Of a stretch of 64,000 bases of DNA, positions 1 to 49,113 are shown piece after piece; positions within the stretch are counted from its first letter, which is position 1; each line of letters starts with the position of its first letter. The stretch is from Schmidtea polychroa (Eukaryota), in assembly GCA_044892525.1 (NCBI GenBank), contig CM097885.1:252030001-252094000 (forward strand). The letters run 5' to 3'. A program made the position numbers and the translations under genes. The notes under the pieces are model-generated. The model searched no databases. It saw only the letters and a list, made by a program, of their open reading frames with translations, and was not told where the DNA came from.

Positions 1-2
1 GA

Positions 3-260
3 GTGGTATTCGATGACCTTTACTTTAATAAATGTCGAGTAGAAGAATTTCTCGCTTTAATAGATTGTGCGTACGAGAACGTTATCAACATCAAATATTC
101 TGTAGCTGTCCTACCAAAGGGATTACCACGCATTTTCTGTATAAACGATATCGATCTTTTTTACCCAGAATGTGTAACATCTACAATAATGGAGGCAATT
201 AAAAGACGAATAAAAATACATCATTTCAGAGGAAGAATTTTTATTTATTTTATTTATTAA
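3..260 (+). CDS. 3' part of a CRESS-DNA-virus Rep-like SF3 helicase (5' end outside window)
   Basis: Shows Walker B-like VFDD, a B'-like segment (IDCAYENVINIKY), motif C-like RIFCIN and Arg-finger-like AIKRR in the order and spacing of CRESS Rep helicase domains. Walker A and the HUH domain would lie upstream of base 1. Confidence 0.62.
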   Translation: MVFDDLYFNKCRVEEFLALIDCAYENVINIKYSVAVLPKGLPRIFCINDIDLFYPECVTSTIMEAIKRRIKIHHFRGRIFIYFIY

Positions 261-532
261 TATATGTTTTACAGACAATGATACATCCCTATCTGACAAC
301 GAGCCAGTCGTCCAGCCAAAATGCCGATTTGTCTCCCTCGAATGCAGAAGCTGCAACAAATTAATGCGATTGTATATTGGTGTTTGTAACAATAGTTTTT
401 AGTTTCATTACCTAATAAATGCATATTAGTGTTTTTTGAAAATAGTTTTTAGTTTAAATAGTCAATAAAAGTTAGAAGAAATTTTTTATTTTATCAAATA
501 TATCGTATTTGACATCGTTTAATACATTTATA

Positions 533-1141
533 TCAGAAAAAAACATCTAAATTAACTTTAAATTCATAAGGTTTTTGAACTACAATATATAAAGACCTAT
601 TTTTCAAAGCTTGTTCATGTTCAGATGCATATTTCCAAATTGGATGATTGTTGGATATAATACATGGACAATTTGTTAATTCAATTTTAGAATCTCCTTT
701 ACGTGAAACTTTAAGAAATATATTCCCTTCGCACATTAATTTAAGCAAATTGACATTTTTAAAATCACAATAGATTTCTTCTCCAATAATAATTTCTTTG
801 CCAACACAATCATCAAAACAGAATTCACTTTGAGTTTGAGCACCGGTGAAAAATCCATGTTTTAATGTTCCATGACATATTGCAGTAAATAAAGTTTTTC
901 CTCCATTACTAGCACCTTCTAGAATAATTGTCTTTGTCTTTCCGGCCTGAGAAGATAGTATTGTATAGATCCCAATAAGCCGACGAATATACTTTTCATT
1001 TTCTTTAGGAACAATTTTACTATTATGAGAAAGAATTCGATTAATTTGTCTATTGTGATCATCGTTAAAATAGAAATTATTGTTATTAATAAAACTCTCC
1101 ATAAAAGTTGATAATTCATTGTATAACAACAACTTGTTCAT
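533..1141 (-). CDS. SF3 helicase, helicase domain only (parvovirus NS1 / papillomavirus E1-like), 202 aa
   Basis: Walker A GASNGGKT, Walker B IIIGEE, B' LKLMCEG..V.RKG, motif C CIISNN and ALKNR. It has its own ATG at 1141 and an intact frame, but no HUH nuclease domain. Confidence 0.85.
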   Translation of the reverse strand: MNKLLLYNELSTFMESFINNNNFYFNDDHNRQINRILSHNSKIVPKENEKYIRRLIGIYTILSSQAGKTKTIILEGASNGGKTLFTAICHGTLKHGFFTGAQTQSEFCFDDCVGKEIIIGEEIYCDFKNVNLLKLMCEGNIFLKVSRKGDSKIELTNCPCIISNNHPIWKYASEHEQALKNRSLYIVVQKPYEFKVNLDVFF

Positions 1142-1324
1142 GATTAATGAAATGACTCATCGATGTTTTGTACTTTTATTCAAAAATATATAGTAAAGTA
1201 AAGGCAATTTACTGTGCCTTCGTTACAAAGGTAATTTACTGTACTTCCCTATATATTTTTGAAAACTCCCACGCAGTCTTTTGTGTGCGGTGTGCTCCTT
1301 ATAGACTTGGGAAATGGGGGGTAT

Positions 1325-1351
1325 GGGGGCCCTGTAGCCCTGTAGGCCCCC
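1325..1351. other. GC-rich hairpin between the helicase cassette and the V-W genes
   Basis: GGGGGCC (1325-1331) pairs with GGCCCCC (1345-1351) around a 13-nt loop, preceded by GGGGGGTAT. It is a GC island in AT-rich DNA. Confidence 0.5.
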
Positions 1352-1400
1352 TAAACAAATTAAAAAACGAAAGAAAGCCATACAACAACATCCAGGAACA

Positions 1401-1715
1401 ATGTTGGAACAAGCCGTATGGCAAAAGATTCAAATGCAACTCAGCCTGCAAACCCAAAGAATTGAACAACTCGAAACTCTCCTACAAGAACAAACCACTC
1501 AACAATCACTGTAGGAAACCATCGTGAAGAAGGAAGCAAAAGAAAGTCAAGTCTTACTCTATACTGCAGTCAGTGAAACCCTTATCATCTGCGCGCTAGT
1601 CGTCTGGAAAGCGTATGACATCTATCGAACATGGGAAAGAAACCAGCCACTATCCTGTATGCGGGACAGACGTAATAAACTTCGAGTCGTAAGAGTGTCA
1701 CTGACAATACCGTAA
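1401..1715 (+). pseudogene. Orphan ORF 'V' (Q/E/L-rich coiled coil plus hydrophobic segment), one premature stop
   Basis: ATG at 1401 is in frame with ORF 1524-1715, with a single TAG at 1512-1514. It reads MLEQAVWQKIQMQLSLQTQRIEQLETLLQEQ...LIICALVVW. Confidence 0.45.
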
Positions 1716-1751
1716 TGTTTGCAGTGTGAGTATAAATGTCTTAACTTTTAG

Positions 1752-2496
1752 ATGACTACCCCAACCAAGTCCGGAAGCACTCTTCGTCCTTGCTTTTCCT
1801 GTGCCGATAAAAATGCGGGGAATTATATCGGGGAATTAAAAAAGAGGATCGACCTCTACGAAGGAACGTGGTTCTCCCCGCCACAAATGAAAGAAGAGAG
1901 CAGTAAAATCTTGCGATTAGAACATTGTCGCGACAGCCTCCTGGAGGAGAGCCGCTGTCAGAGACTGACAATAAAGGCCCAGTCGGAAGCCCTCCACAAG
2001 GTGTATATGGAGGCCGAGCTGGCAAAACGAGTACGAGAGTTTCCCATTCAAGATAAAGCCAATGTTTTCCCACTCACCATCAGTTATCCGAGTCGTCAAA
2101 GTCAGGCTGCGGAGGGCATGGTCCTTATCTGCCACCCATCCCAGCCCCAGTGCTGTCAGGTTACCGACCAATGGCGGGTGGCTCTTCTGACCCCATCCTG
2201 GCCCCAGTCCTCGTCGCACCCGTCATAGCGCCTTCAATAGGTAACGACCCGCCATCCCGCAATAGGAAGCGACCAACCAGATCAGAAAAAAATCAAAAGC
2301 GAAGAAACGGATGGCCGCCCTCGAAGCGTCGTTGTCGGTGGCGCAATCAACGATCGAGCAAATATCCTCCACGCACTCAATTCCCGCAAAGGAGATCTTC
2401 CGAGTAATTCCGGCCGAGGGGATAAAGTTTATCACAGATCATCGACTACCTGTCGACATCGACGAGATGCTCGCAGAAGGAGAAGTATTCTCGTAG
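1752..2496 (+). pseudogene. Orphan gene family 'W', copy 1 (frameshifted)
   Basis: RPCFSCADK, EGTWFSPPQMK, EHCRD, SEALHKVY, NVFP, basic RKRPTRSEKNQKRR and C-terminal VDIDEMLAEGEVFS are spread over three frames. All are shared with the copies at 6.3-7.1, 15.2-15.9 and 18.7-19.4 kb. Confidence 0.7.
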
Positions 2497-2868
2497 CGAA
2501 CTTTTTCATCGGTCTCGATTCTCCTACATTATGAATGAACTCGAAAAATTTGACATTATCGTGTGCATGATCTTTAATGTTTTGTCATTATCTAAATAAT
2601 GGTGAATGTCTCTTTATGTTTATTTGAATATAATTGTTCGATTTCCTTGACTGTGTTAATAGTATGCGTGATTGTTCGAGGTTGATTTGAATGAAAAGGT
2701 GATCATGAAGATATAGTATGAGCTTAAATGTCGTCCCTCTGGACCAGGGTCGGACTGAATCATGTGTGTAGCAATAGGTAAGATCTCCTAAGGCACAAGG
2801 GAACCCGAACCGAGAAGGGGTTAGGAGTTGTCCTAAGGCAGGGGTTCACCTGCTAACCTTTTCCAACC

Positions 2869-2912
2869 CGTGTGGGCAGTACCAACGTGGAACATCACCA
2901 CGGGCTCATACG
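2869..2912 (+). ncRNA. Conserved two-stem structured motif, copy 1
   Basis: Stem1 CGTGTGGGC/GCTCATACG, linker AGTACCAA, stem2 CGTGG/CCACG, single G. The same architecture occurs at 25377 and 30384 with different stem sequences. Confidence 0.45.
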
Positions 2913-3091
2913 TGGGAATATTTGTATGATCATTTGGAGTATGTAAGGGAAGTGTCTGAGCGGAACGATGATGCTTTCTATGTAGTACAATCATGTAGAT
3001 ATATTTTTCTTTTCCCACATACGCCAACATTTGTAATTTATCCAAAAGTGTTGTACTTTGCGGCTGAAGATAAATAAGAGTCAATTTGTGG

Positions 3092-3870
3092 TTAATATTC
3101 GACAGGTTTCTTATACAGAACTTCTAAAATAGCCAAGTGAACACCATGGTTGTAGCAAAGTTGATGGTATGACGGAATCAATTTACCAAACTTTACCATA
3201 ACAACTGCACCATCACTTGTGCAACTAACTATGTCCGAAAAGCTTAGTGCAAAATCACGCAATCTATTTTTAACCATTTCTACAGCCTTTTCACTTGGAC
3301 AAGCGCCATCTATTCTTGCAAGTCCTAAATTACAAAATTTACCATCACTGTAGTGTAGATTAATGTTCATATACCGCCGGTTTCTTGTACTAGTCCATTC
3401 GTCTGTTGTGATGCTGAATTTGGTGTTGCTGGTTTTTAATACATTGATTTCATCGCATATATGACTTTTTATTTCATAATAATAATCTCTGACAAGTTTT
3501 TGAATATCGGATTGATGTTTTGGTAGCGTATAGCCCCGCTCAGTAATTGATTGTCGGATGAAGCTACTATTACTGATGGCACGAAAAGATATTCCATCCT
3601 TTGCCACTAATCGCGAAATAATTTGAGCTAAAGATGCTTGTTTTACAAATTTAAATATAGATGATTGAAATTTTGACAGGAACATTTTCTTCGGTTTCAT
3701 TCTCTTGGTGTAAGGTATTTTTGGTCTTAATTGTTATACTATGTTTCGTCTTTAAATGACGTATTAAACCAGTTGTTGATGATACTTTAATGAATATTTT
3801 GTTTGTGCAGTAATTGCATACTGCATATTCGCCTTTTTCATTTTTTGTAATGTTTCCATGATTCTGATTC
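3092..3870 (-). mobile_element. hAT transposase 5' fragment (BED finger plus N-terminal catalytic part), truncated and frameshifted
   Basis: BED-like AVCNYC...LIRHLKTKH lies upstream of ORF 3092-3700, which contains FSITTDEWT (first catalytic D), SDGA and CYNH (CxxH). It is clearly related to the hAT at 59.2-61.7 kb. Confidence 0.85.
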
Positions 3871-5079
3871 CATTTTTGGGAAGTCTAATTTTAAATTTTG
3901 AATCTACAAGTAAAAAATTTCGTTAAGAAATTGTAATAATTTATTAATTCAGTGTTATTTGAAAAATATACCTTTTTTTATTTTCGAAATATTTTTGAAA
4001 TATAATAATCAGTGTCTTTACGAAATCAAACTAACATAACAAAACATTCATTTTGCATGTTAAAGAAAACCATGGAAACACAATAATCACAAAAAATATC
4101 AATATAAAATTAATAATATTTTGATAATATAATTAATAATTATATATATTTTTAATTATTAATCTTGATTTGACAAAGTATAAATCAAAATTTTTTTTTG
4201 TAAATTCAAATATATATTTTTAAAATCATTACAATTTAGGTTATTTAAACACCAACAAAATAATACAATTAATAAATTATAAACGAAAAATTGATATATT
4301 AGCACACATAAGAATCATATTTATAAATGAATATTAATAAAATTTTAAATATTTTTATAGTGTAATGAATTTAAATTCTTTCAAAAAATTGACCTAATTC
4401 ACGGGAATTTTCTTATTTTTATCGTCATAGTTGAATATGGTGGGTTTGGGAGGGCTGTTATAAGCTATCAATATGAGTTGGTTGGGTATATCAGTTTCAA
4501 GTGATTTCTGAGTTGAAAATTACCAATTTACTAAGTTTTTGATGCGGTTATAAAATTAGAGTAGGAAATCCTCCGTTCACTCATTTCATAACGTCACTAA
4601 TATTTCTAATCGAAAATTGGATAACAATTTATTGAGATTCGGAAATATACATGGCCAAGTCATTAATTCCCATCGAAAATTTTTAGCAGGGATCTCCCTG
4701 TCATTCGGGTTCCAGATTATATACGTTTATCAATATTCTAACTGAAGTTTGAATCACAGTTCAATTTGTGGAAATCGGAAATTTTTATGAATAAGTTTTT
4801 AATTCCTTTAATTCTCCCTGTTATTTTTTGTTTGTTAATTCATCAAATTTATCAATTGCAAATTTTATTTTATGATATAATCGATTACATTTTAGAAATT
4901 TTGTAGTTTTACCAATCAGTATTTTGTGCGTATTTTGAGTAAAATTCAGATTATTCGTTTGCCTTCTTCAGCCGAACTCCACTTGAGAGAACAAATCCAG
5001 TGTCTTATATTATACATATTTGGATGTAGTATTTGGATATGTAATATTAATGCGTTAAGGTTCATTAATTAAAATTTGT

Positions 5080-7052: not shown

Positions 7053-8532
7053 TCTAGAAATTGTAAATAATTTTATTAACCCTATCACGCCTGTTCCCAT
7101 TCGGCCATCATGCATCATACCTCGCCAAAGATTATTATGTCATACAGAGCAATCAATCAAGTGATAATAATAATGATAATAATGGTAATAATAATACTAA
7201 TTCGGGATAATAGTCAATCTACTTCGGACACCCTTAGGGGAGAAAACGTCAGAGTTCTGTTAACATGATAACAATCAGCATCACTTATCTGCTGTCTCAT
7301 TTTACTTTCCGCACCCCGGGGGTTGATTATTTGATTAACCCATTCTTTAGTTGAGTCGAAATAAAAGCCAAAAATGGCGTGAAATTCCCGCCGATTGAGG
7401 GTGATTATTTCATAAAAATCCCCCTAAGAAAATATCTACTTCAAAATGAACAAAAATTAACTACAATGTCTGATAAGCGAGAATTTAACTTTCGATCGGC
7501 GCTCATGATTTTATCGGCATAGTTGTTGATTTTTATTTAATTTTTCCTATGTGTATTATCTCTCACCGTGTCTTGTATCCATTTAATCCCACAAGTGTCA
7601 TTAGGTACCTCAGTAGAGTTATCTCGGTGTGTTTGGCCGACATGCGATTAGTACGAGTGCACGTGTTCCGATTTCAGGGTTCTCGATTCGACTCGTGGGT
7701 CTACGATTATTACTCGTGCGATATTTGTATTCGTGTGATTGGTGCATGGATGTTATCGGAATGGTAGATCCCCCTGGTGAATGCTTATCTATACCGGTGC
7801 TAATGCTATGTCGATATGATCTATGATCTGCAAATTATCAGCTGGTATGATTCGTTAATCTGGTGGCATTCCCATCGCCTAAAATGTACTCGGCCAATAT
7901 TAGGTGAAATAATATGAATGGAATCATCTGAAAACTCGGTTTTATGGTAAAAAGATTCCTAATGTGATCTAGATGTTCGGGCAAATCTCTTTGATGTAAA
8001 TATACCTAGTGCAATGCGAGTTTGAAAACCAGACGTGAAAATTATTTGATATCGAGTCCCGTTTGATTTCGAAAATGCTTTTCATTGGAACTTCGTGATT
8101 TTTATTTTTAAATTGAGATTTACTGCAAATCGACTTTCTTAGTTAATTATATGTGTTTTACTATGAACCGCAAAACTGATTTATCTGTCAGCAATATCAA
8201 AAATCATGTTGGTCCCCGCTCGAAGTTGTCAGTGTAATGACTCTCGAAATTTTCCTCGTAGTGGAAAATAATTAGTGCCTGTTGAATACATTTAACCTTT
8301 CTTTTGTATTTTTCCGACGTCTCGCTGATTCATTCAGTGTGACACGATAAATTAAAAATGACGATTTTTATGAAGATAGCGTTTCTTCCTTTAGTTGATA
8401 CTCTGAGTGTTCTCTGAGGACGTTAGTCCTACTAGAGTAACTATCAAACTTGCAACATGAGCTTAGATTGGTGCAGCATACGATTTTTATATGAATTATG
8501 ACGATGACGGGTGAAGGTCAAGAATCAGGAAT

Positions 8533-18711: not shown

Positions 18712-19445
18712 TCACTGAAACACCTCTCCCTCGGCTATCAGAGCATCGATGTCTACCTGAAGCCGAGCATCTTCTTGTATTTTGACTACTCCAGAAGGGA
18801 TGAGTCGATAAGCTTCTTTTGCGACAGGTGGATGCGCTTTCGAGATTGGATTATTTGAAGCTTGAGCCGCGAATAGAGACGCTTGTATCCCGACGTTTTT
18901 GGTTTTTCTCCACTCGGGAAGGATGCTTACGCTTTTTTGAGGTAGGAACGGTAAGTGCGACGGCATGATCGATTGACGACGTGGAAGGTACGCTCTTATC
19001 TGTGGTTGTCAGGTAGTCCGTTTTCGTTGATGATACTGATAGAATTGGGTCAACCAATGGCAGAAAGTGTAGTCCATGTCCTGAGCAAATAGTTAGTGGT
19101 TGCGGCACTTCGTCATTGCGTTGATGTAGGGGAACACGTTTGTTCTGGCTTCGATGGGGTACTCCCTCACTCTCTTTTGGATCTCTGAGTCAGAATAGAC
19201 TTTATGAAGCGCCTCCGATTGGGCTTTGATTGTTAGCCGGTGACATCGGCTCTCTTCCAGGAGACTGTCTCTGCAGTGCTCCAGTCTTAAGATTTTTGTT
19301 TTCTCCTTTTTCATCTGTGGTGGGAGAACCACGTGCATTCATAAGTTTCTATGCGCTTCTTAAGAGCCCCGATGTACACGTGAAGCTTGCGTATATCTTC
19401 GTTTTTATCCGCGCAGGAGGCAAGTTTGGCTCACACATGCCTGAA
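18712..19445 (-). pseudogene. Orphan gene family 'W', copy 4 (frameshifted; closest to copy 1)
   Basis: SCADKN, PPQMK, LRLEHCRDSLLEESRC.RLTIKAQSEALHKVY, NVFP, KRKHPSRVEKNQKRR and VDIDALIAEGEVFQ. Confidence 0.72.
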
Positions 19446-22107: not shown

Positions 22108-24010
22108 TTAAATCGATTTGCATGCACAATCATATATTTTACTCCGGAATGGTAACAATTTTAAATTGGTTTCGGTGGTGTCGCACACTTTGTATGGCCT
22201 TTTAAATGGTCTTTGTAATTTCGGCGATAGACCTTTGAGAGGTTCCGGTCTGTTAAGATATACTAGATCTTCGATCTTTATGCCATGCGCATGTGCTTTT
22301 TTATCGTAGGCTTCTTTATATTTCTCTTGGTTGTGCTTTATTGTCAAACCGGCTTTAGTCCATACTGATTGCATTCTTTCTTGCATCAATACTTTATAAT
22401 CGGGTATATCCATATTTTGTGAAATTGGTGGTTGGAATTTGAGATCAATCGGCATATTATTTTTCCTTAAATACATCAAATAAATAGGGGTGTCACATGT
22501 ACTTTGATTTACTGTATTTCTGTAGGCAAATAGACACGGCTTAATGAAGTCGTCCCAATCTTTCTGTTTTCGATTCAAATATGATGAGATCATATTTATC
22601 AGTGTCCCATTAAATCGCTCCACTAATCCATCAGTTTGTGGATGATATGGTGAAGTATTCAATTTCTGCGAGTGATGCATACTTTACAACTGTTACACCA
22701 ATTTTTCATGTCTTGTTCCATTGTTGGCCAAAGTATTTCAGTTTTAATCTTGATAGCGTCTTGCGCGTTGACAAATGACCTCCCAAAGCTCCATCATGAT
22801 AATGCATCAGTAATGCGTCTTTGTGCTTGGCTGGGATAATAATTAATGCTTCGCCATTTTTCCAACATTTAAGTATTCCATTATGAATTACATATTTGCT
22901 GTTTGCATCTGTGAGTCGTTTCCAATCTTGTTTCTTTCTTATTTTGACCGCTTGTTCCATAAATTGTTTTAATTCACTATCGTTTTCCTGATAATTTTGT
23001 AGTTCAGGCATTTCATTAACAGCTTTGATTGCAGCGAATATAGTGCCTTCCAATTTTTCAGGTGTTCCTTCACTATCATTTTCTGGGATTCTTGACATAG
23101 CATCTGCATTCGCTTTAGCTTTACCTGTCCAATATTTAATATCAAAATCGTATTCTTGGAGGGCAATCGACCATCGTATTAACTTACTGGCTGAATCTCT
23201 GTGTTTCATTAACCACTGTAGTGGATTATGATCCGTATAAACAGTAAATTTTCTGCCCAATAAATATTGTTTAAAAGTAGTAATTCCATACACTAACGCT
23301 AACGTTTCCTTTTCAATAGTTGAGTAGTTTTTTCATGAGATCTCAGTGATCTGCTTGCGTATAATATTACGTGGTCCTTTTCACCTTCAAATTTTGGCCC
23401 AACACCGCGCCCAATGCAACATTGCTTGCATCCGTCAACAAGATAAATTGTTTCGTAAAATCTGGACATCGTAATATGGGAGTTGTCACTAATTTCTCTT
23501 TTAATGTATTGAAAGCGCTTTGTTGCATTAGTTCCCAAATAAATTTGTTGTTTTTCTTTAGTAACGTATTCAATGGTTGAGCGATATGAGAAAAATCTTT
23601 TATAAATTTTCTGTAATAGCTAGCTAAATCTAAAAATTGTCTGACCTCATCGGCATCTTTTGGTACTGGATACTCTTCCACTTTTTTGATATTATTTGGA
23701 TTAGTTTGTAACCCTTGCCGTAATATTATATGTTTCGATGGTTTGATTTTTAATTTTGCACTTTTGAGCTGTTTAAATACGGTTTCTGCATCTTTGAGGT
23801 GTTCTTCAAAATCATTTGAAAATATTATTATATCGTCGATATATAACAATGCATGTCGAATACCTCGTAACACATAATTCATTCCTCGTTGGAATGTAGC
23901 TGGGGCTCCTGTTAATCCAAATGGTAACACGTTAAATTCATATAGTTCTTTGCCATCAGAGAACGCAGTCTTTCCTCTATCTTTTTTTTCCCTTTCATTA
24001 TGAGCGAAAT
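22108..24010 (-). pseudogene. pol: Gypsy pol (RT-RNase H-integrase), frameshifted
   Basis: ORFs 23367-24035, 23299-23538, 22706-23293 and 22108-22680 carry the consecutive motifs. Confidence 0.9.
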
Positions 24011-24011
24011 T

Positions 24012-24948
24012 CTTCCGGATTTGATATATAACCAAACAAGAATCTGTATATTTGACATAATCAACACCTTTCTATGGAATGTGAAGATATGAATTGTGAT
24101 GAAAGAAGTGAAACCAGAGGATCCGTGTGTTTTCGGATGCAGAAATCAACTTTTTGTTGGAAAAATTAGCAGAAATAGCTGGTGTAAAAATTGAGGACAT
24201 ATTATCTGTTACAAATGCATTAAATATCGGCTGGGTAGTTGAGAGTCAAGATTCAGGATTTGATGATCAGGAAGAAACTCAAGAAACTGATGAGGAAATC
24301 TATGAACCTATAGATGAACATAAAGATACAGAAAATATTACGAATGATTGTATTGATCATGTCGTTGAAAATGTAATGAAATGCGGAGATGACGATTGTG
24401 AATGTATTAATTAATAAATTTTAGTTAATTATTTCATATATTTAATATTTCTTATATATTTATTTAAAAAATTAAACAACATAACTACTTTATATTTTAT
24501 TCAAAAATGTAGAAATTACATACAAAATAGCAACACCTGTTGCAAGTTTAATATAGTTTTTAAACTTTCTTTGATGCTCATCCATTTCCTTGGCATTTCG
24601 GGCGAGTTGATTCAATATACCCCATCCGCCATGGTGTAAACTTAGACTTGATTATCTAAAAAAATGAATATTATTAAAATATAGATTATAAAAGTATAAC
24701 TTCTTGAGACCATTGATAATAGTGTTCTGAGTCCCGTAAACCTTTTTCGATGATAATTTTCATATAAGTGAACCCTACAATTATTCGGGTCCACTTCATT
24801 TCTTCATCACATAGGCAATCGAATATTCTATTAAAATAATTTTTTTTTGTTTCAAGACAATCCGTATTCAGCATATCTTCGTAATCAATATGGTTGCCTT
24901 CAATAATTTTTTCGGTCCGATCGATCAGGAAACTGAGGCTTTCGATAA
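24012..24948. mobile_element. Internally deleted fragment of a related Polinton (inverted relative to the full copy)
   Basis: 24012-~24140 matches Polinton ~41190-41310, and ~24145-24948 matches Polinton ~40215-39430 (acidic ORF plus Bcl-2-like gene with the same intron). The copies are clearly diverged, not identical. Confidence 0.85.
24490..24948 (-). pseudogene. Bcl-2-like gene, 5'-truncated copy with a 14-bp deletion in BH2
   Basis: MKWTRIIVGFTYMK and the intron position are conserved. CCATGG[ATAGAAGCCAATGG]CGGATGG is collapsed to CCATGGCGGATGG, causing a frameshift. Confidence 0.8.
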
Positions 24949-34700: not shown

Positions 34701-35400
34701 CTCCTTTAAAATGCTCTAATAATCTGTCAAAAATTATTAAAAATTAAAATTTATTCATAAATAAATGTCTTCTGTACAAAATAAACATTAGTGATTTGCG
34801 CAAGTTATTAAAGTAATTATTATGCAAAATTTATTAACAATTTATTTTTGAAAAATTAAATCAAAACAATAATTTAATTTAAAAATAATTTAAAATATAA
34901 TTTAATTAATTTTAAAGTATAAAGTGATGATTTCTTGGTAGCAGGATTTATTATTTAAAACAATAAAGTGATAATTTAAGCCTTCTGCTGTGAATACTTT
35001 TTTATTAAATACATTATTCGCAGCAAAAGGCTTAAATTATCACTTTATTGTTTTAATTAATTTTATTATAAGAACTATTTTTTCAAATTTCACCACTGAT
35101 TTCTTTTCCATTGTATTTATTAAAAACCTTGAAGACTGTGAATCAGTAAATATATCGATGTTCTTGATAAATATATTTACTGATTAATACTCTTCAAGCT
35201 TTTTAATAAATAATTAATTTTAATATTAAAATATATATTTTTAGATATATAATATTAAATAGCATTTATAGAAATTCTATTTATAATCAGGCAAAATATA
35301 TTTGAAAATATTAATTAAAAGAGCAATAACCCGTTAAAAATGACGGATATTTTGTATTTAATAAACACCGAAATGAACAAATGATTGGAATTGTATCTTG

Positions 35401-37868: not shown

Positions 37869-38096
37869 CAATTTTCACCTCCGATTTCTTTTCAATTGAC
37901 ATAGTATTTATTAAAATAACTTGACTATGAATCAATAAAGATTTCGATATTTTTTATATTCACGAATTTTCGGCACTGCCTTTTTCAAGTGTTTTGATCA
38001 GTCACTTGAAAAAACCAGTGCTGAAAATTCGTGAATATAAAAAAAAACATCGATATCTTTAATGATTCATAGTCAAGTTTTTTAATAAATACAATA
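37869..38096. mobile_element. Palindromic MITE family copy (relatives at about 35080, 55020, 62161, 63185)
   Basis: Shares the end CAATTTTCACCTC(C/T)GATTTC and the internal inverted arms GACTATGAATCA.TAAAGAT.TCGAT. Confidence 0.65.
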
Positions 38097-39079: not shown

Positions 39080-39172
<93 letters not shown>

Positions 39173-41616: not shown

Positions 41617-42081
41617 TTAATTAAGTGATAATAAAAAATCTAAAAATTCATTTCCTTCAATTATTGATTTAATTTCAGATATGATATTATCAACTATACA
41701 TTTGTAATCAATATTTTTTATTCCAAGAATTACTATCTTACCGCTAGCGAATATATTTACACACATAGGGTTATATTTTATATATCTCAAAGCTGGAAAT
41801 AATTCTGGTTCGTAAACACATGGTATTAATTTAGCCAATTCATTTAAATTACAAGAAAAACCTATATCGGAAGTTACGGTTATCGATTGTATTTCTAAAT
41901 CATAAACATTATATTCACTAGCTTTGATTATTTCCTTACACCCCATAATTCTACATTTACCAGTTTTGAAATATATTATTGGATATTTTTTACTTCTATT
42001 GATGAGTTGTTGTGGTTTCCCCATTGGAAATACCATTTTTGATACATCAGCTTTTGCCCTGTAATTTATATTTGAAAGCAT
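41617..42081 (-). CDS. Polinton-encoded TATA-binding-protein-like protein, 154 aa
   Basis: Both TBP repeats are recognisable: LSNI, IYFKTGKCRIMGCK (cf. LIFSSGKMVCTGAK), DLEIQSI..SDIGFSCNL (cf. DFKIQNM..CDVKFPIRL), YEPELFPALRY (cf. YEPELFPGLIY) and NIFASGKIVILGIK (cf. LIFVSGKVVLTGAK). Confidence 0.85.
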   Translation of the reverse strand: MLSNINYRAKADVSKMVFPMGKPQQLINRSKKYPIIYFKTGKCRIMGCKEIIKASEYNVYDLEIQSITVTSDIGFSCNLNELAKLIPCVYEPELFPALRYIKYNPMCVNIFASGKIVILGIKNIDYKCIVDNIISEIKSIIEGNEFLDFLLSLN

Positions 42082-42185: not shown

Positions 42186-42824
42186 ATGGAATTACGAAAT
42201 GATGCAGTATACCAAATCGTTGGTCCAAGTGGTAGCGGAAAAACATTATTTGTTTGTAAATTACTAAAATCAAATTTGTTCAAAACAAAATTCAACAATA
42301 TTTATTGGCATAGGGGCGCCGATGAAGAACATGGATTGACACAATCAAGTTTCTGTCAATTGAAAAACATGAAAATAGTAAAGGGTTTTGATAAAAACTG
42401 GTCAAGTCGTTTGAAGAAAGATGATGTCATCATTATCGATGATTTGTATCAAGAAGCCAATAAAGAAAAGGATTTTAATAATTTATTCACAAAAATCAGC
42501 AGACATGTTGGTGTAACAGTTATTTTCATAACACAAAATCTATTTCATCAAGGTGGTGCACATCGAACACGTAATTTAAATGTACAATATCTAGTTATTT
42601 TCAAAAATCCTAGAGATGCAACTGTCATTGATTTTCTTGGACGACAAGCATACCCTAATAACCGTAATTTTCTTATCAATGCATTTCAAGATGCTACGAA
42701 AATACCTCATGGGTATATATTTCTCGATTTCACACAACAATGTCCTGATGATATACGGGTAAAAACAGATATTTTCAACCCAAAAGGTGCCATGGTTTAT
42801 AAACAAAGTTCAAAACAAATTTGA
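42186..42824 (+). CDS. A32-like/FtsK-HerA DNA-packaging ATPase
   Basis: Walker A GPSGSGKT, Walker B IIIDD, Arg finger SRH, and ITQN; intact 212 aa. Confidence 0.93.
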   Translation: MELRNDAVYQIVGPSGSGKTLFVCKLLKSNLFKTKFNNIYWHRGADEEHGLTQSSFCQLKNMKIVKGFDKNWSSRLKKDDVIIIDDLYQEANKEKDFNNLFTKISRHVGVTVIFITQNLFHQGGAHRTRNLNVQYLVIFKNPRDATVIDFLGRQAYPNNRNFLINAFQDATKIPHGYIFLDFTQQCPDDIRVKTDIFNPKGAMVYKQSSKQI

Positions 42825-42837
42825 AAACATATAAATA

Positions 42838-43332
42838 ATGTTTTCAAAAACAAGGATATCGAGTAAAAAACAACCAAAAGTTCCACCAACAACTAGTTAT
42901 ACTCCATCTAAAGAACTTATTACAGAAAATTTTCCAGCAATGAATCTTATTTCGAAAAATCCTAAACCTAAACCTAAAAGTAAAACCACTAAGAAAGTAA
43001 AAGTTGTTAAAAATCATCGGAGTTTCCCGTTTTTCAATACATTGTTAAAAGCACCCAGTATGAAAAGAATGAATATTTTACAATCTTTTCCAAATTATGT
43101 TGTCGATGATTTACTCGATATTATACTTAAAGTAGTCAAAGGCAAGCTTAAAATCAGTAAATCTAAAAAGCAATTATTGAGTAAACATAGGAAACCTTTG
43201 CTATCATTATTAAATAATAAAAATTGTCAACAAATGAGAAAAATTATATATAAACAACAAGGGGGATTTATCGGTGCATTGATACCTTTTGCAATATCAT
43301 TATTAGGTGGAATAATAGGAAGTCGATCATAA
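42838..43332 (+). CDS. Basic virion core/membrane protein with an adenovirus pX-like C-terminus
   Basis: Lys-rich body followed by KQQGGFIGALIPFAISLLGGIIG, resembling the GG-F/I-L.LIP hydrophobic tail of adenoviral pX. Confidence 0.6.
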   Translation: MFSKTRISSKKQPKVPPTTSYTPSKELITENFPAMNLISKNPKPKPKSKTTKKVKVVKNHRSFPFFNTLLKAPSMKRMNILQSFPNYVVDDLLDIILKVVKGKLKISKSKKQLLSKHRKPLLSLLNNKNCQQMRKIIYKQQGGFIGALIPFAISLLGGIIGSRS

Positions 43333-43335
43333 ACA

Positions 43336-43512
43336 ATGGGTGCTAATCCTTCATTACCAGACATTAAATTTAATATTAAATCTTCTTGTTGTAATGGAGA
43401 AGATTTGGACGAACCCCGAAGACGAAGCCGGTTTCGGTGGAGTGGCAAAATTAAACAAAAGAGTTCCGAATTCGAAAAAGGAAACCCAGAAGTGGTTATC
43501 AGACCAGCTTGA
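43336..43512 (+). CDS. Small 58-aa putatively myristoylated ORF overprinting the integrase 5' end
   Basis: AAACAATGG context; MGANPS fits the MGxxxS N-myristoylation consensus; also KSSCC and a basic RRRSRFR. It falls below the ORF-track cutoff. Confidence 0.45.
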   Translation: MGANPSLPDIKFNIKSSCCNGEDLDEPRRRSRFRWSGKIKQKSSEFEKGNPEVVIRPA

Positions 43513-43781
43513 GTACAGTTTGAACAAACCAATGCAGAAACGATTCCCAACAAGAGTATATAAAACATATGGAATAAATGATTTATGGCAAATGGATTTG
43601 ATGGAGATGATACCTTATTCGAAAATTAACAATGGGAATAAATATATTTTAACATGTATTGATGTATTCAGTCGGTTTGCCCGAGCAATACCTGTCAAGG
43701 CAATATCTGCAGATGAAATGTCTAAAGCTGTTAATGATTTATTTAAAGATGGACATCCTAATAACTTGCAAACGGATTTAG

Positions 43782-43852
<71 letters not shown>

Positions 43853-44486
43853 TTTAGGTAAAGAATTCTACAACAGTAAAGTCAAGCAAATCCTCAATAA
43901 ATTGAAAATAAACCATTACTCGGTACATTCTCAATACAAAGCTGCTCATGTTGAAAGATTTAACAGAACATTGAGAGATAGATTAAAGAAATTATTCGTG
44001 CATCAAGGTAATAAAAAATGGGTAAATGCTTTACCGAAAATAATAACAAGTTATAATCATTCATCACATCGAGGACTGAATGGATTAAGGCCGGTTGATA
44101 TTACATCAAAAACATCATTGACTTCGAAGAAATCTGTAAAAATTACAAAACCGAAATATAAAGTCGGTGACCATGTTAGAATTAGTAAAATTAGTGCATC
44201 ACCATTTATTAAAAATTTCGATACAAATTGGAGTGATGAAGTCTTTGTAATTTCAAAAATAAATACTAGTCAGAATCCTGTAATGTATGTCATCCAAGAC
44301 AATGATAATAATATTGTACAAGGGAAATTTTATGAGCAAGAATTGCAAGTTATTCCTCCCCCAAAAGTATTTAGAATTCAAAAAATATTGAAAACTAAAA
44401 CGGTCGGCAAGGATAAACAATACTATGTCAAATGGCATGGTTATCAAAACCCGTCATGGATATCAGCAAAAGACCTAGTAAAGTAA
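43394..44486 (+). CDS. Polinton rve integrase with C-terminal chromodomain; exons 43394-43781 and 43858-44486
   Basis: DDE triad WQMD, LQTD and HVERFNRT. Splicing out the 76-nt GT-(ATT)n-TTTTTAG intron restores TDLG|KEFYN. The chromodomain is FRIQKIL...YYVKWHGY..PSWI. Confidence 0.93.
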
Positions 44487-45499
44487 ATTTTTATACTATT
44501 TTGCCTAGCAATAGTTGCCCGCTTATTCATTCAGATAATCAAGCCAGTAAATTCATGGTCAATCTCCAGAATCCGATTTCTTTAAATGGTGACTGGGAAG
44601 TTGCACTGCAAGATTTTACATTCGTGTACAACACATTCCCATTTTTTAGTCAATGTAAGATTGATTTCAAAAGGAATGCTATGAAAACATGTAGCGGTAT
44701 CTTTATTATCAGTAATTATGATAAAACATATCATATTCCGAATCAAATATTAGATTCGCATTGCTATATGTTTTACAAGGATGGATTAAATATCAGTTGT
44801 GATGTTAAACCATTTACAATAACATTCGAAACTATTGAAGATGCCAAACGAATGGGTTGCAATAAGTTGAAAAATATTGTTACGGAGACTGAGTATTTAT
44901 TACGTTTTAATCTATTTGAAGCAAACAGTGTAATGAAAGAAGAAATCAAAATATCTGTATCGTATAATGATGAAATTGAAGAATCATTTACCTTTGCTGA
45001 TGAATTATATTTTGATAAACTTGATGATTTACTTAAATATTTAAAGTTCAATTGTTCACACATATTTAAAAATTTGGAAATTGTGAAAGATTTGATGTTT
45101 ACCTTCAGTTTGAATGAGGATATTTGCGAAGTTACATTTGATAAAAATTTGTCAAATTCATTTGGATTAGATAAGCAAAAATATCGAGAAAAATCGACTG
45201 GTATACGCAAACAAAGAATACTTGAACATCATCAACAAATGTTCATATATACTAATATTATTGACCCTATAATTGTTGGTGATTCCAGTGTTCCTCTTTT
45301 GAAATCGGTATGGATTGGAAAATATGAACATGATGAAGTTGTCAATATAAATATCGATAATCCCATGTATTTACCAATAGTAAGTTCATGTATAAACAAT
45401 ATAGAAATAAATATTCGTGACGATAGTGGAAAACTTATAAACTTTCCAAAAGACTCAAAAACTCATTTGACACTACATTTTCGTAAAGTAGATGGCTAA
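44432..45499 (+). CDS. Polinton minor capsid (penton, single jelly-roll) protein
   Basis: FYTILPSNS...N.AS.F.VNL.NPI.L.GDWEVAL at the N-terminus and GD..VPLL...YLPI...I.NIEINIRD..G...F...T.LTLHFR at the C-terminus. The start may be 44456. Confidence 0.85.
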   Translation: MAWLSKPVMDISKRPSKVNFYTILPSNSCPLIHSDNQASKFMVNLQNPISLNGDWEVALQDFTFVYNTFPFFSQCKIDFKRNAMKTCSGIFIISNYDKTYHIPNQILDSHCYMFYKDGLNISCDVKPFTITFETIEDAKRMGCNKLKNIVTETEYLLRFNLFEANSVMKEEIKISVSYNDEIEESFTFADELYFDKLDDLLKYLKFNCSHIFKNLEIVKDLMFTFSLNEDICEVTFDKNLSNSFGLDKQKYREKSTGIRKQRILEHHQQMFIYTNIIDPIIVGDSSVPLLKSVWIGKYEHDEVVNINIDNPMYLPIVSSCINNIEINIRDDSGKLINFPKDSKTHLTLHFRKVDG

Positions 45500-45854
45500 T
45501 TCCGATATTATTAGTATGTATAGTGATAGCCAATCTGGCGGTGAATTACCATATTTTATTGGTAAACAGTACGGATCAGGTTGGTTAAAAACAATAGGGA
45601 GATTTGCACTTCCTATTCTTAAACGTATTGGTAGTTTTGGCATGAAAACTGCTAAAGACGTGATTATGAATGAACAGAAAATATTACCATCCCTAAAAAC
45701 AAATGCTTTAGCTGAGTTAGGGAAGGTTCTACCTGGAGTTGCTGGTATGTTTCAAAAAGATACGCCTCCAGCCACAGCTCCAAAACGTAAAAGACATGGA
45801 ATATCGCGTATAAACAAACGAATGAAAGGACATGGAACTATATTTGCAAAATGA
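45492..45854 (+). CDS. Conserved Polinton virion protein (PZ/pVI-like, amphipathic, basic C-terminus)
   Basis: SQSGGELPYFIGKQYGSGWLKTIGRFALPILKRIG; positioned between the minor and major capsid genes. Confidence 0.7.
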   Translation: MANSDIISMYSDSQSGGELPYFIGKQYGSGWLKTIGRFALPILKRIGSFGMKTAKDVIMNEQKILPSLKTNALAELGKVLPGVAGMFQKDTPPATAPKRKRHGISRINKRMKGHGTIFAK

Positions 45855-47074
45855 TTTGTGGTAAATCCGAATTATGTATATTTGATAGACCATCGCCTCA
45901 AGCTGTAATAGAATTTGGGGCATTTGAGGAAGTTTTTCCTATGAATTCAATTACTGATAGTAGAAATGATATCGAGTTTTATATTAATGGTTCGCAAACT
46001 GAATATTTAGATTTGAACGATACTTTATTGACTGTCCAGATCAAGGTTGTAGATAAAGATAGAAAAGTTTTGGATGCCAATGCAGATGTAATACCGAACA
46101 ATTTCATGTTTCATACTCTGTTTAAAGATGCAGTGTTGGGATTTAATAATATCAAGATTGAGGGCGGAAATAATACATTCATTCACAAGGCATTAATAGA
46201 AACTATTTTAAATTACAATTCTGATACTAAAAATACATGTCTTACACCTATGGGTTATGCATCAACAGATGATGAAAGAAAAAAGTGGGTTAAAGGCTCA
46301 AAATCATTCACTATGTGCTCATCATTACAACTCGATTTTATGGATCAACCGAAATATTTGCTACCAGGAGTTAATGTACACATTAGATTGAAAAGGGCCG
46401 ATTCTGCATTATCTCTTACTAGTGCAACTGGTGCACCAATATGCCAATTAGTTGATGCAAAATTATTGGTGAGAAGAGTTCGAGTAGACCCGTCAGTATT
46501 AGCTGGTCATCAATTGGGTCTTAATTCAAAACATGCAATTTATCCTTTAAAAACAAAGGAAATTGTACAATTTGCTATTGCTAAAGGTGCTTCATCATTC
46601 TATAAAGAACAAATATTTGGTGACAGAAGAATGCCTAATTTTATTCTGGTAACATTTCAAAGTGAAACGCAATATAATGGATCTTATACTGCTTCCAGCT
46701 CAATTTTCAAATATTTTGGTGTTACTTCATTGACTTTGTCGAAAAATACTGATTATAGAGAAACATATACTCAAGATTTCGAAAGCGATAATTACTGTGC
46801 GACATATATGCAGAGTATTGTTAGAAATCTGTGTTACTTAGATAAAAACTTGAATTGTGGAATTACTCTAGAAGAATTTAAAAGCAAATATCCATTTTTT
46901 ACATTTGTTTTAGCCCCTGATTTTGATTTAAATCAGAGTCAACTACCACAAAACGGAAATTCACGACTGGATATTAAGTTTGCAAAGGCCATTACAGAGC
47001 CGGTACATGTTATAATATATGGAGTATTTGAAAATGAAGTTCAAATTACTGCAAATAGAACCGTGCTAGTATAA
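45851..47074 (+). CDS. Polinton major capsid protein (double jelly-roll, PY)
   Basis: KSELCIF..P.PQ..IE...EEV.P......IEF.I.G....YLDL.DT.L at the N-terminus; QPKYLLPGVNV.IRL; intact 407 aa. Confidence 0.9.
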   Translation: MICGKSELCIFDRPSPQAVIEFGAFEEVFPMNSITDSRNDIEFYINGSQTEYLDLNDTLLTVQIKVVDKDRKVLDANADVIPNNFMFHTLFKDAVLGFNNIKIEGGNNTFIHKALIETILNYNSDTKNTCLTPMGYASTDDERKKWVKGSKSFTMCSSLQLDFMDQPKYLLPGVNVHIRLKRADSALSLTSATGAPICQLVDAKLLVRRVRVDPSVLAGHQLGLNSKHAIYPLKTKEIVQFAIAKGASSFYKEQIFGDRRMPNFILVTFQSETQYNGSYTASSSIFKYFGVTSLTLSKNTDYRETYTQDFESDNYCATYMQSIVRNLCYLDKNLNCGITLEEFKSKYPFFTFVLAPDFDLNQSQLPQNGNSRLDIKFAKAITEPVHVIIYGVFENEVQITANRTVLV

Positions 47075-47486
47075 ATGTATACAGAAACATAAAAAGTTGT
47101 CATGGAGTAAGTTGTTTTTTATACTCAGGATTTATTAAAATAGTTCTGTTCAGGTTAATCGAATTGGAAAACAAATATTAGGAAATGAATTTGTAGGTGT
47201 TTTTCCTCTCGATAAAATTCCTTATTTGAGCAATAATCAAGCCATAATCGTCAATACTCATTAGTCTCATCTTGGTGGAGAACATTGGATAGCTATATAT
47301 GTGAAACCTAGTAATATATTCGTATTCGATCCTATGGGTTTCTATTATCCTGCTTTGTTGATATCAAAACTTCAAACAATTGGGAAACCTATTGTATATA
47401 ATAAAACTATGTTTCAAAATCCATTGACTCAAACATGTGGTCAACACTGTTTGGCATGGTTGTTGTATAAAAAATTTGATGGTTAA
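47075..47486 (+). pseudogene. Adenain-like cysteine (maturation) protease, disrupted
   Basis: FVGVFPLDKIP, VNTH*SHLGGEHW, FDPMG, FQN and TCGQHC give catalytic H/D/C plus the oxyanion Q. There is an in-frame TAG at 47262-47264, a probable 47-nt intron at 47107-47153, and the 5' exon is out of frame with ATG 47075. Confidence 0.85.
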
Positions 47487-47844
47487 TAAATGTATACTGT
47501 ATGATTTTTATTTGTTGACTATTTTAATTATTTGTTAAATATTGTTAAATATTATTATTTGTTAAATATTATTATTTTATGTTTAAAATTTTATGTTTAA
47601 AAATATTATGTAATACTATTACATGTTCAGTGCATGCACAGTGCAAAGTAACAAAGCACTGAGTAATAAAGACATGTAAAGGTCATTATTTCGTCATGGT
47701 TTGTATAAACAAACATGTAGTGTCTTTTCCTATCCTATCTCTATTTTCATTGGTCGGTTAATAAAACCTTTAATATCTCTCTTATATAGTCTACACTTTC
47801 ATTTTTTCATCACTTTTAAAAATCTATTAATAATATTTAACAAC

Positions 47845-49037: not shown

Positions 49038-49113
<76 letters not shown>

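What the first reader, a model, noticed from the sequence alone, without database searches (positions are those of the whole stretch)
3..1351. Tail-to-tail Rep-like and E1/NS1-like helicases: a chromosomal PEVE-like virus
Seen: two different SF3 helicases converge about 270 bp apart. One is CRESS-Rep-like (+); the other is a stand-alone NS1/E1-type helicase domain with its own ATG and intact frame (-). Recalled knowledge, to be verified: the planarian extrachromosomal virus-like element PEVE (Girardia tigrina) was described as encoding a circovirus-Rep-like helicase and an E1-like helicase domain. Inference: this is an integrated PEVE relative, a very poorly characterised virus group.
Basis: partly seen in the sequence, partly recalled or inferred. 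Interest (0 to 1): 0.82.

Follow-up and report, generated by a model that had tools for sequence, protein, structure and literature searches.

The report
Chromosomal fragment of a PEVE-like virus
The left edge of this window holds the tail of a Rep-type replication gene and an intact small helicase gene, both related to the two helicases of the planarian virus-like element PEVE; it is a divergent new copy of a rare but already described kind of element.

Summary
Window 3-260 (+) is the last 85 codons of a gene that runs off the left edge. Window 533-1141 (-) is an intact 202-codon gene. Their stop codons face each other across 272 bp.

- **The minus-strand gene** is a stand-alone parvovirus-NS1-type SF3 helicase (Pfam Parvo_NS1, 4.5e-14). 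Its model (pLDDT 93) fits AAV2 Rep40 best. Among 1.84 billion cluster representatives, its third-best hit is the PEVE helicase (4.5e-22, 34% identity).
- **The plus-strand fragment** has no Pfam hit of its own. It is 40% identical to the C-termini of 330-449-residue proteins encoded next to ORF-B-like helicases on four public contigs. It also matches the Rep-like ORF of the PEVE large segment (8e-12). That family gives sub-threshold geminivirus and circovirus Rep hits, and its ATPase model fits circovirus Rep best.

So the PEVE reading is supported. Three points qualify it:
- The helicase is inverted compared with the four relatives that have both genes.
- No PEVE-type inverted repeats are visible.
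- Integration rests on the assembly alone.

Integrated planarian relatives (PIVE) are already in Repbase, so this is a new member of a known kind. Moderate interest.

The parts
1..260 (+). 3' end of a Rep-like gene (frame from base 3; 85 codons visible; the rest lies left of the window). Encodes the part of an SF3 helicase domain from Walker B through motif C and the arginine finger. No stop or frame change in the visible part.
   Evidence: ORF; 40% identity to the C-termini of P0156-P0159, with invariant Walker B, motif C and Arg-Arg columns; match to the PEVE large-segment Rep-like ORF, 8e-12; the family hits Gemini_AL1_M (4 of 4 full-length members, best 6e-6) and Viral_Rep (3 members, best 1.1e-4); the family model's best PDB match is PCV2 Rep.
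261..532 (.). AT-rich spacer between the two converging stop codons. Contains one imperfect 37-nt direct repeat pair (383-419 and 433-469, 78% identity). No function shown.
   Evidence: AATAAA motifs occur here at the window's background rate of 6 per kb, so they carry no weight.
533..1141 (-). Intact gene for a stand-alone 202-residue SF3 helicase of the parvovirus NS1 / AAV Rep40 type: an N-terminal three-helix bundle plus an AAA+ core, with no nuclease domain. Walker A, Walker B, motif C and arginine-finger columns are all kept. No breaks.
   Evidence: Parvo_NS1, 4.5e-14. (AAV Rep40, 7e-5 by sequence). (PEVE helicase 4.5e-22; best hit P0001 2.3e-31, 39% identity). (conserved columns). (pLDDT 93; AAV2 Rep40 Foldseek E 5e-10, rmsd about 2 A over about 143 residues). 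(BFVD: parvovirus NS1 proteins).
1179..1263 (.). Branched AT-rich hairpin (15-bp outer stem with two small inner arms), 38-122 nt upstream of the helicase ATG and right at the composition break. It could be the end of the element, a promoter-region palindrome or a host palindrome. Not conserved in relatives.
   Evidence: 38-nt arms, 79% complementary. (z -4.9 and -4.05; 0 of 200 shuffles fold as well); no counterpart upstream of the helicase in five relatives; seven other hairpin repeats of 30 nt or more in the 64 kb.
1264..3700 (.). Right flank, not part of the element. A G+C-richer repeat (1824-2006 has a 73% inverted copy at 19195-19376) is followed by a hAT transposase fragment (3092-3700, -).
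   Evidence: G+C. (repeat). (43% identity to the hAT transposase at 59447-61051); no ORF of PEVE or of the other relatives matches anything here.

Best explanation
Window 1 to about 1263 is the right-hand part of a copy of a PEVE-like ssDNA virus or virus-like element. As assembled, it lies in a transposon-rich, AT-rich animal chromosome.

It carries the module that defines the group. One gene is a Rep protein: in its relatives an HUH-type nuclease region, a geminivirus-type central region and a circovirus-type SF3 helicase. Only the last 85 codons are visible here. The other is a second, separate, small SF3 helicase of the parvovirus NS1 / AAV Rep40 type.

**Inferred mechanism in the parent virus:** Rep nicks the origin and starts rolling-circle or rolling-hairpin DNA synthesis. 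The small helicase is a hexameric or heptameric 3'-5' DNA motor. By analogy with the small AAV Rep proteins, which are likewise helicase-only, it unwinds or translocates single-stranded genomes, for example into capsids.

**In this copy:** the helicase gene is inverted relative to Rep, so the two genes converge. This is either a rearrangement at or after integration, or the alternative isomer of a genome whose helicase segment can flip between inverted repeats, as PEVE's layout would allow. The helicase ORF is intact with all catalytic columns. The insertion is therefore young or the gene is still under selection.

**Shown:** homology of both ORFs, the shared gene pair, the fold of the helicase, the inversion relative to relatives, and the boundary with host-type repeats.
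**Inferred:** the biochemical roles, the origin of the inversion, and the integration itself.
For: - **ORF B as helicase:** Parvo_NS1 4.5e-14, above the cut-off. Model pLDDT 93, best fit AAV2 Rep40, then B19 NS1, then E1.
- **ORF B and PEVE:** the PEVE helicase is a named hit at 4.5e-22. The closest relatives are all 211-244-residue stand-alone proteins.
- **ORF A:** 40% identity to the C-termini of Rep-like proteins P0156-P0159, and 8e-12 to the PEVE large-segment Rep-like ORF.
- **Rep character of the ORF A family:** Gemini_AL1_M in 4 of 4 full-length members, Viral_Rep in 3. Foldseek top hits are PCV2 Rep 7lar and 8xms.
- **Synteny:** the Rep-like gene and the helicase are adjacent on L001, L002, L004 and the P0010 contig.
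- **PEVE layout:** its two unique regions are bounded by the same 243-251-nt inverted repeat.
- **Boundary and host context:** G+C jump and hairpin at 1179-1263. The flank holds a window-internal repeat and a hAT fragment. The rest of the window holds gypsy, hAT and Maverick elements.
Against: - Only about 1.26 kb is visible. The Rep Walker A and nuclease region, any capsid gene and any terminal repeats lie outside the window.
- No inverted repeats bracket the helicase gene here, so the flip model has no direct support in this copy.
- The four relatives with both genes have them in tandem.
- The hairpin has no counterpart in relatives, and similar palindromes occur elsewhere in the window.
- The Rep-family Pfam hits are below the curated cut-offs, and the Rep model is poor overall (mean pLDDT 46; 58-84 per 10-residue block in the helicase part).
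- Integration rests on the assembly alone.
- No protein above about 43% identity exists in the 15-billion-protein collection, and the host could not be identified.
Confidence: 0.72

Rival explanations
1. The sequence is a free, episomal PEVE-like virus genome of the sequenced animal that the assembler joined to a chromosomal scaffold. The convergent gene order would then be the virus's true layout or one of its isomers.
For: PEVE itself was described as extrachromosomal and had not been found integrated (Liu et al. 2011). Both visible reading frames are unbroken. The helicase keeps every catalytic column. The break at about 1265 coincides with a hairpin, which is the kind of structure at which assemblies join wrongly.
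Against: The fragment is continuous with 62 kb of host-type repeats in the assembly. There is no N run nearer than 48152. No other PEVE or relative ORF is found beyond the helicase. Integrated relatives are documented in another planarian (PIVE).
Confidence: 0.15
2. It is one copy of a multi-copy, transposon-like integrated family of the PIVE type listed in Repbase for Schmidtea mediterranea. In that case it is an already catalogued repeat rather than a one-off viral insertion.
For: Liu et al. 2011 report 'numerous' parvovirus NS1-like sequences in S. mediterranea, annotated as PIVE and closest to PEVE. The window's G+C of about 30% and its repeat load fit a planarian-like genome.
Against: There is only one copy in 64 kb. 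A widespread family in a much-sequenced species should have left close relatives in the protein collection. Yet the exact ORF B is not on record, and the best hits are 39-43% identical. Ten other window proteins are also absent. The PIVE sequence itself could not be compared because Repbase is not among the tools.
Confidence: 0.1
3. The helicase gene is a domesticated host gene derived from an old viral insertion and kept by selection. The Rep fragment next to it is a decaying remnant.
For: ORF B is intact with all motifs, although the element around it appears truncated and rearranged relative to its relatives.
Against: No orthologue or close paralogue is available, so selection cannot be measured. 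ORF A is also free of stops over its visible length. The closest DNA-level relative is a degenerate fragment in an unrelated run (L009, 74% over 112 nt).
Confidence: 0.03

Closest known systems
[quoted passage not shown] 2002)
   Same: Both genes have homologues in PEVE. ORF B matches its 227-residue stand-alone helicase (34% identity, 4.5e-22). ORF A matches the 272-residue Rep-like ORF of its large segment (32% identity, 8e-12). Like the PEVE ORF, ORF A ends about 10 residues after the arginine-finger block, without the 40-55-residue tail of the Logan relatives.
   Different: Identity is only about one third. PEVE's 243-251-nt inverted repeats and its 165-residue small-segment ORF are not found here. 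This copy is chromosomal as assembled, whereas PEVE was described as extrachromosomal.
Unnamed Rep-plus-helicase contigs from public sequencing runs (L001, L002, L004, L005, the P0010 contig)
   Same: These are the closest relatives of both proteins: ORF A 40%, ORF B 34-39%. They carry the same adjacent gene pair.
   Different: There the helicase follows Rep on the same strand, overlapping it on the P0010 contig and separated by 38-371 nt on the others. In the window the helicase is inverted. Their Rep proteins carry a longer C-terminal tail. Their hosts are unknown.
PIVE, the integrated planarian virus-like element of Schmidtea mediterranea (Repbase 2008; Liu et al. 2011)
   Same: It is a chromosomal relative of PEVE with a parvovirus-NS1-like gene in a planarian genome.
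   Different: It could not be compared directly because its sequence is in none of the tools. The absence of any close relative of ORF B in the protein collection argues that this is not a near-identical copy.
AAV2 Rep40/Rep52 (small Rep proteins of dependoparvoviruses)
   Same: Best structural match of ORF B (Foldseek E 5e-10, about 25% identity, rmsd about 2 A over about 143 residues) and best PDB sequence match. Both are helicase-only proteins: a helical bundle plus an SF3 core, with no nuclease domain.
   Different: In AAV the small Reps come from an internal promoter of the same gene as the large Reps. Here the helicase is a separate gene, and the nuclease-bearing Rep is of a different, CRESS-type lineage with its own helicase.
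Circovirus / CRESS-DNA virus Rep (e.g. PCV2 Rep, PDB 7lar and 8xms)
   Same: Best structural match for the ATPase part of the ORF A family (E 1.6e-5, target TM about 0.6, 20% identity). The family also gives Viral_Rep and Gemini_AL1_M hits.
   Different: All Pfam hits are below the curated cut-offs. The family's sequence profile finds PCV2 Rep in the PDB only at E 0.61. Known CRESS viruses do not carry a second helicase gene.

Membership tests
PEVE-like elements | A stand-alone SF3 helicase homologous to the PEVE small-segment helicase | tested here: met
   phmmer over 1.84 billion representatives gives P0003, named as the PEVE helicase, at E 4.5e-22 covering residues 13-199. blastp gives 1e-31.
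PEVE-like elements | A Rep-like protein homologous to the Rep-like ORF of the PEVE large segment | tested here: met
   ORF A against L008:4126-4944 gives 8e-12. Family members reach up to 5.7e-37. Only the C-terminal 85 residues can be tested in the window.
PEVE-like elements | Two unique regions bounded by inverted repeats of about 250 nt | tested here: inconclusive
   PEVE records: 251-nt and 243-nt repeats. In the window, no repeat pair brackets the helicase. However, the left part is outside the window and the right side is replaced by flank.
PEVE-like elements | Extrachromosomal DNA with single- and double-stranded forms | not testable with these tools
   This needs reads or physical DNA. 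The assembly shows the copy joined to host-type repeats.
CRESS-DNA virus Rep (HUH nuclease + SF3 helicase) | SF3 helicase Walker B, motif C and arginine finger | tested here: met
   The columns are invariant in ORF A, four relatives and the PEVE ORF. The family ATPase model is closest to PCV2 Rep (model confidence moderate in that part only).
CRESS-DNA virus Rep (HUH nuclease + SF3 helicase) | N-terminal HUH nuclease domain and Walker A | not testable with these tools
   Both lie left of the window. In relatives, a Walker A loop and His-x-Gln and Tyr-x-x-Lys columns are present. Viral_Rep is hit by 3 members, best 1.1e-4, below the cut-off of 26 bits.
CRESS-DNA virus Rep (HUH nuclease + SF3 helicase) | Curated Pfam Rep profiles matched at the gathering score | tested here: not met
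   ORF A alone has no hit. For the two relatives listed individually, Gemini_AL1_M scores 20.1 and 21.1 bits against a cut-off of 24. The best E-value across the four full-length members is 6e-6.
Parvovirus NS1 / Rep SF3 helicase | Parvo_NS1 profile at the gathering score and a Rep40-like fold | tested here: met
   52.5 bits against a cut-off of 20. Foldseek: AAV2 Rep40 5e-10, B19 NS1 about 1e-7. BFVD: parvovirus NS1 proteins at about 1e-13.
Parvovirus NS1 / Rep SF3 helicase | Helicase fused to an N-terminal HUH nuclease/origin-binding domain, with a VP capsid gene alongside | tested here: not met
   ORF B is 202 residues with only a three-helix bundle before the ATPase core. No Parvo_coat hit appeared among the window ORFs scanned.
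Papillomavirus E1 helicase | PPV_E1_C profile at the gathering score | tested here: not met
   14.3 bits against a cut-off of 26.5. E1 structures rank below Rep40 and NS1, at 13-15% identity.
PIVE (Repbase, Schmidtea mediterranea) | Nucleotide-level similarity to the Repbase entry | not testable with these tools
   Repbase is not available here. It is known only through Liu et al. 2011.

The most novel reading that the evidence does not exclude
The window shows a young germ-line insertion of a member of a wider, still unnamed family of animal ssDNA viruses. That family is defined by a conserved two-helicase module: a CRESS-type Rep plus a separate Rep40-like motor. PEVE would be its only described member, and several uncharacterised contigs in public runs would also belong to it. 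The convergent gene order would be the second isomer of a genome whose helicase segment inverts. That would give a sequence-level record of such isomerisation in this group.
Probability: 0.25. Interest if true: 0.6.

Novelty: new member of a known kind. Interest (0 to 1): 0.42.

Why it matters
PEVE-like elements are chimeras. They combine a circovirus/geminivirus-type Rep with a second helicase from the parvovirus lineage, and they have stayed almost unstudied since 2002.

This copy, and the contigs found while checking it, show three things:
- The Rep-plus-small-helicase pair is a conserved module in several divergent genomes (32-59% protein identity between them).
- The other genes of those genomes are not shared at the blastp/tblastn level.
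- A member can sit in a chromosome as assembled with its small helicase still intact.

This gives virus-evolution work a small set of sequences for placing the group, and gives annotators of this genome a name for the locus. It does not change any general picture. Integrated planarian relatives were already catalogued, and only a 1.26-kb edge fragment is visible here.

Tried and rejected
**Searches that found nothing or little**
- The word-indexed protein search found nothing with ORF B. With the Rep family it found only the four Logan proteins, not the PEVE ORF.
- The exact look-up of ORF B and of ten other window proteins found nothing, so the host stays unidentified.
- The IMG/VR scan with ORF B alone and the scan with the Rep alignment found nothing. 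The scan with the helicase alignment found only the PEVE small segment itself.
- The one metagenome scan gave two 2.1-kb marine contigs with distant Rep-like ORFs and no helicase partner. They add little.
- PHROGs and Rfam gave nothing.
- The PEVE paper itself is not held. Run and assembly accessions are cited in no held paper.

**Ideas tested and dropped**
- Inverted repeats around the helicase gene: none found.
- Shared hairpins at the ends of relatives' contigs or upstream of their helicase genes: none found.
- Poly(A) and TATA motifs: they occur at the background rate, so I dropped them.
- Bacterial-type promoter and terminator scan: not meaningful for this sequence.
- Host or transposon helicase (for example a Helitron): rejected, because both proteins hit viral families and PEVE.

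**How the PEVE large segment was reached**
It was not returned by any protein search. I found it with the DNA search, using a 30-nt stretch copied from the inverted repeat of the tool-delivered small-segment locus, not an accession. I compared it only, and joined nothing.

The motif statements above come from the alignment outputs.

Full report
**What is in the sequence**

The window starts inside an open reading frame. From base 3 to 260 on the plus strand there are 85 codons without a stop, and the frame is open at the left edge. On the minus strand, 533-1141 is an intact 202-codon ORF with an ATG start. The two stop codons face each other across 272 bp.

The first kilobase has G+C of about 0.30. 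From about 1200-1300 onward G+C rises to 0.40-0.53. There is no second copy of either ORF in the 64 kb, and the nearest N run starts at 48152.

**ORF B (533-1141, minus strand)**

- It scores 52.5 bits on Pfam Parvo_NS1 (E 4.5e-14, cut-off 20). On PPV_E1_C it scores only 14.3 bits (cut-off 26.5).
- By sequence, its only significant solved relatives are AAV Rep40 and Rep68 (7e-5 to 2.6e-4).
- A full HMMER scan of 1.84 billion cluster representatives gave 306 hits at E of 0.001 or better. The best three are stand-alone proteins of 222-244 residues.
- In alignments with 9 and with 30 relatives, the Walker A glycine and lysine, the Walker B glutamate, the motif C asparagine and the arginine-finger column are invariant or nearly so, and all are present in ORF B.
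- An AlphaFold model built on the 31-sequence alignment is confident (mean pLDDT 93, pTM 0.88). It shows a three-helix bundle followed by an AAA+ core.
- Its best PDB matches are AAV2 Rep40 chains (E 5e-10, about 25% identity, rmsd about 2 A over about 143 residues). B19 NS1 comes next, then papillomavirus E1 at 13-15% identity.
- In the viral structure library, the top hit is an unnamed 227-residue protein at 32% identity, which by length and identity is probably the PEVE helicase. Parvovirus and bidnavirus NS1 proteins follow.

ORF B is therefore a helicase-only protein of the parvovirus NS1/Rep40 type, not specifically E1-like.

**ORF A (3-260, plus strand)**

Alone, it has no meaningful Pfam or PDB hit. 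Its identity comes from context.

- The contigs that encode the two best ORF B relatives (L001, L002) also encode, just upstream, proteins of 337 and 330 residues. Their C-termini are 40% identical to ORF A (tblastn 8e-17 and 1e-19).
- Two more family members (P0157, 449 residues; P0158, 345 residues) came from a protein search.
- In the alignment, ORF A covers the part from Walker B to just past a conserved Arg-Arg pair. 21 columns are invariant, including the Walker B aspartates and a Pro-Arg-Ile-x-Cys-x-Asn block at motif C.
- The relatives carry a Walker A loop further upstream, which would lie left of the window.
- All four full-length members hit Gemini_AL1_M (best 6e-6), and three hit Viral_Rep (best 1.1e-4). 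For the two members scanned individually, these scores fall below the curated cut-offs.
- A model of P0157 is poor overall (mean pLDDT 46) but reaches 58-84 per 10-residue block in the ATPase part. Its best PDB matches are porcine circovirus 2 Rep (7lar, E 1.6e-5; 8xms, target TM about 0.6).

**The direct test against PEVE**

No protein search returned the PEVE Rep-like protein. I reached the large segment by searching IMG/VR with a 30-nt stretch of the inverted repeat of the small-segment locus that the tools had already delivered. This gave L008 (5699 bp).

- ORF A matches L008's 272-residue ORF at 4126-4944 with 32% identity over 71 residues (tblastn 6.8e-11, blastp 8e-12).
- The full-length relatives match the same ORF at up to 5.7e-37.
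- The PEVE ORF and ORF A both end about ten residues after the Arg-Arg block. The Logan relatives have a further 40-55 residues.

**Gene order**

On L001, L002, L004 and the contig of P0010, the helicase follows the Rep-like gene on the same strand. It overlaps the Rep-like gene on the P0010 contig and is separated by 38-371 nt on the others. In the window, the helicase gene is inverted relative to Rep.

In PEVE, each of the two unique regions is bounded by the same inverted repeat: 251 nt in L003 and 243 nt in L008, both 98% complementary. The 30-nt probe lies at the same offset within L003's left repeat and L008's right repeat. With such a layout, the relative orientation of the two regions is not fixed by the records, and either isomer is possible.

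The window would correspond to the isomer in which the 3' end of the helicase gene faces the 3' end of Rep. However, no inverted repeats bracket the helicase here. A rearrangement at or after integration is therefore at least as likely.

**The right end**

Between the helicase ATG (1141) and the G+C jump lies a branched hairpin, 1179-1263. It has a 15-bp AT-rich outer stem and two small inner arms. No shuffle out of 200 folds as well (z -4.9 and -4.05).

None of five relatives has a comparable structure upstream of its helicase gene. The window holds seven other hairpin repeats of 30 nt or more. I therefore leave its role open: the end of the element, a promoter-region palindrome, or a host palindrome.

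Beyond it come a repeat with a 73% inverted copy at 19195-19376 and a hAT transposase fragment at 3092-3700, 43% identical to the hAT gene at 59447-61051. No other ORF of PEVE or of the Logan relatives matches anything in the window. Those other ORFs also do not match one another. Only the two-helicase module is shared across the group.

**State of the genes**

- ORF B: no breaks.
- ORF A: no breaks in the 85 visible codons. The rest is outside the window.
- Among relatives, the N-terminal part of the Rep-like protein lies in a separate overlapping frame in three genomes (L002, L005, PEVE), with one frame change each. It is continuous in one (P0157). This may reflect splicing or another expression device rather than damage.

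**How it most likely works (inference from the families)**

In the parent virus, Rep would nick and rejoin DNA at the origin and load its own SF3 helicase. The separate small helicase resembles the AAV small Rep proteins in both fold and domain make-up. It would act as a ring-shaped 3'-5' DNA motor, for unwinding or for moving single-stranded genomes, possibly into capsids.

In the chromosome, the fragment is most simply a recent viral insertion. I cannot tell whether its helicase is expressed or has any role for the host.

**Comparison with what is known**

PEVE was described in 2002. Liu et al. 2011 (PMC3198968) report numerous NS1-like sequences in Schmidtea mediterranea, annotated in Repbase as PIVE and closest to PEVE. 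They note that PEVE itself had not been found integrated. A 2026 paper documents integrated densovirus NS1 genes across flatworms (PMC13055364).

The present copy is only 32-43% identical at the protein level to anything in the collections searched. Neither it nor ten other proteins of the window are on record. It is therefore a divergent new member rather than a catalogued copy, but the kind is known. The host remains unidentified. Its composition and repeat content would fit a flatworm, but that is not shown.

**Verdict**

- The helicase is NS1/Rep40-type rather than E1-type.
- Integration is unverified.
- Integrated relatives are already known.

Interest is moderate.

Noticed in passing
window 42186-52985 (+), perhaps from 41617: A Maverick/Polinton-like element. 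It has an A32-type packaging ATPase (42186-42824, Pox_A32 2e-7), an rve integrase with a chromodomain (43340-44486), an Endonuclease_7 domain (50591-51148) and a protein-primed DNA polymerase B (51093-52985, DNA_pol_B_2 1e-24). Several large ORFs have no Pfam hit (44432-47074, 48813-50612). A TBP-domain ORF sits just upstream on the other strand (41617-42081, 3.9e-15). An N run lies inside the element (48152-48288) and was left untouched.
   Followed up: partly
window 22108-24035 (-): Fragments of a Ty3/gypsy-type pol gene (RVT_1 2.8e-18, RT_RNaseH, Integrase_H2C2, rve_3) split over three ORFs.
   Followed up: no
window 59447-61051 (-) and 3092-3700 (-): A 534-residue hAT transposase ORF (Dimer_Tnp_hAT 1.6e-8) and a 202-residue fragment of a related hAT, 43% identical. 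The fragment lies about 1.9 kb from the virus-like fragment.
   Followed up: partly
L002, L005, L008 versus L004 (P0157): In three relatives, the N-terminal part of the Rep-like protein is in a separate overlapping reading frame. In one relative it is fused into a single 449-residue ORF. The recurrence across genomes 26-59% identical suggests a conserved expression device, such as splicing or frameshifting, rather than decay.
   Followed up: partly
L001, L002, L004 (3' ends): All three short-read contigs stop 27-79 nt after the helicase stop codon. That is what a terminal or inverted repeat at that position would cause, but folding the contig ends showed no clear hairpin.
   Followed up: partly
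L011 and L012 (marine metagenome contigs Ga0115006_10141479 and Ga0115005_10108574, 2.1 kb each): Small contigs with 458- and 370-residue ORFs distantly related to the ORF A family (ORF A against L011: 27% identity, 7e-8). They have no Pfam Rep hit and no second helicase. They may be CRESS-like genomes with an undescribed Rep lineage.
   Followed up: partly
L010 (GCA_014845315.1, JACSEB010000548.1) and the P0010 contig: Stand-alone ORF-B-like helicases followed by a convergent 463-567-residue gene with no Pfam hit. These are other genome layouts around the same small helicase.
   Followed up: no
window 34950-35212 and 37950-38044: Long near-perfect hairpin repeats (42-54-nt arms, 89-93% complementary) in a very AT-rich stretch (G+C 0.10-0.25). 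They could be MITE-like palindromes.
   Followed up: no
window 7164-7201, 39081-39169, 43782-43852, 49037-49113: The same simple repeat, whose matches recur in 3-nt steps, appears at four places, two of them inside the Maverick-like element.
   Followed up: no
window 1824-2006 and 19195-19376: A G+C-rich repeat present twice in inverted orientation (73% over 183 nt). The first copy lies in the flank next to the virus-like fragment. ORFs there (for example 1752-2228) have no Pfam hit.
   Followed up: no
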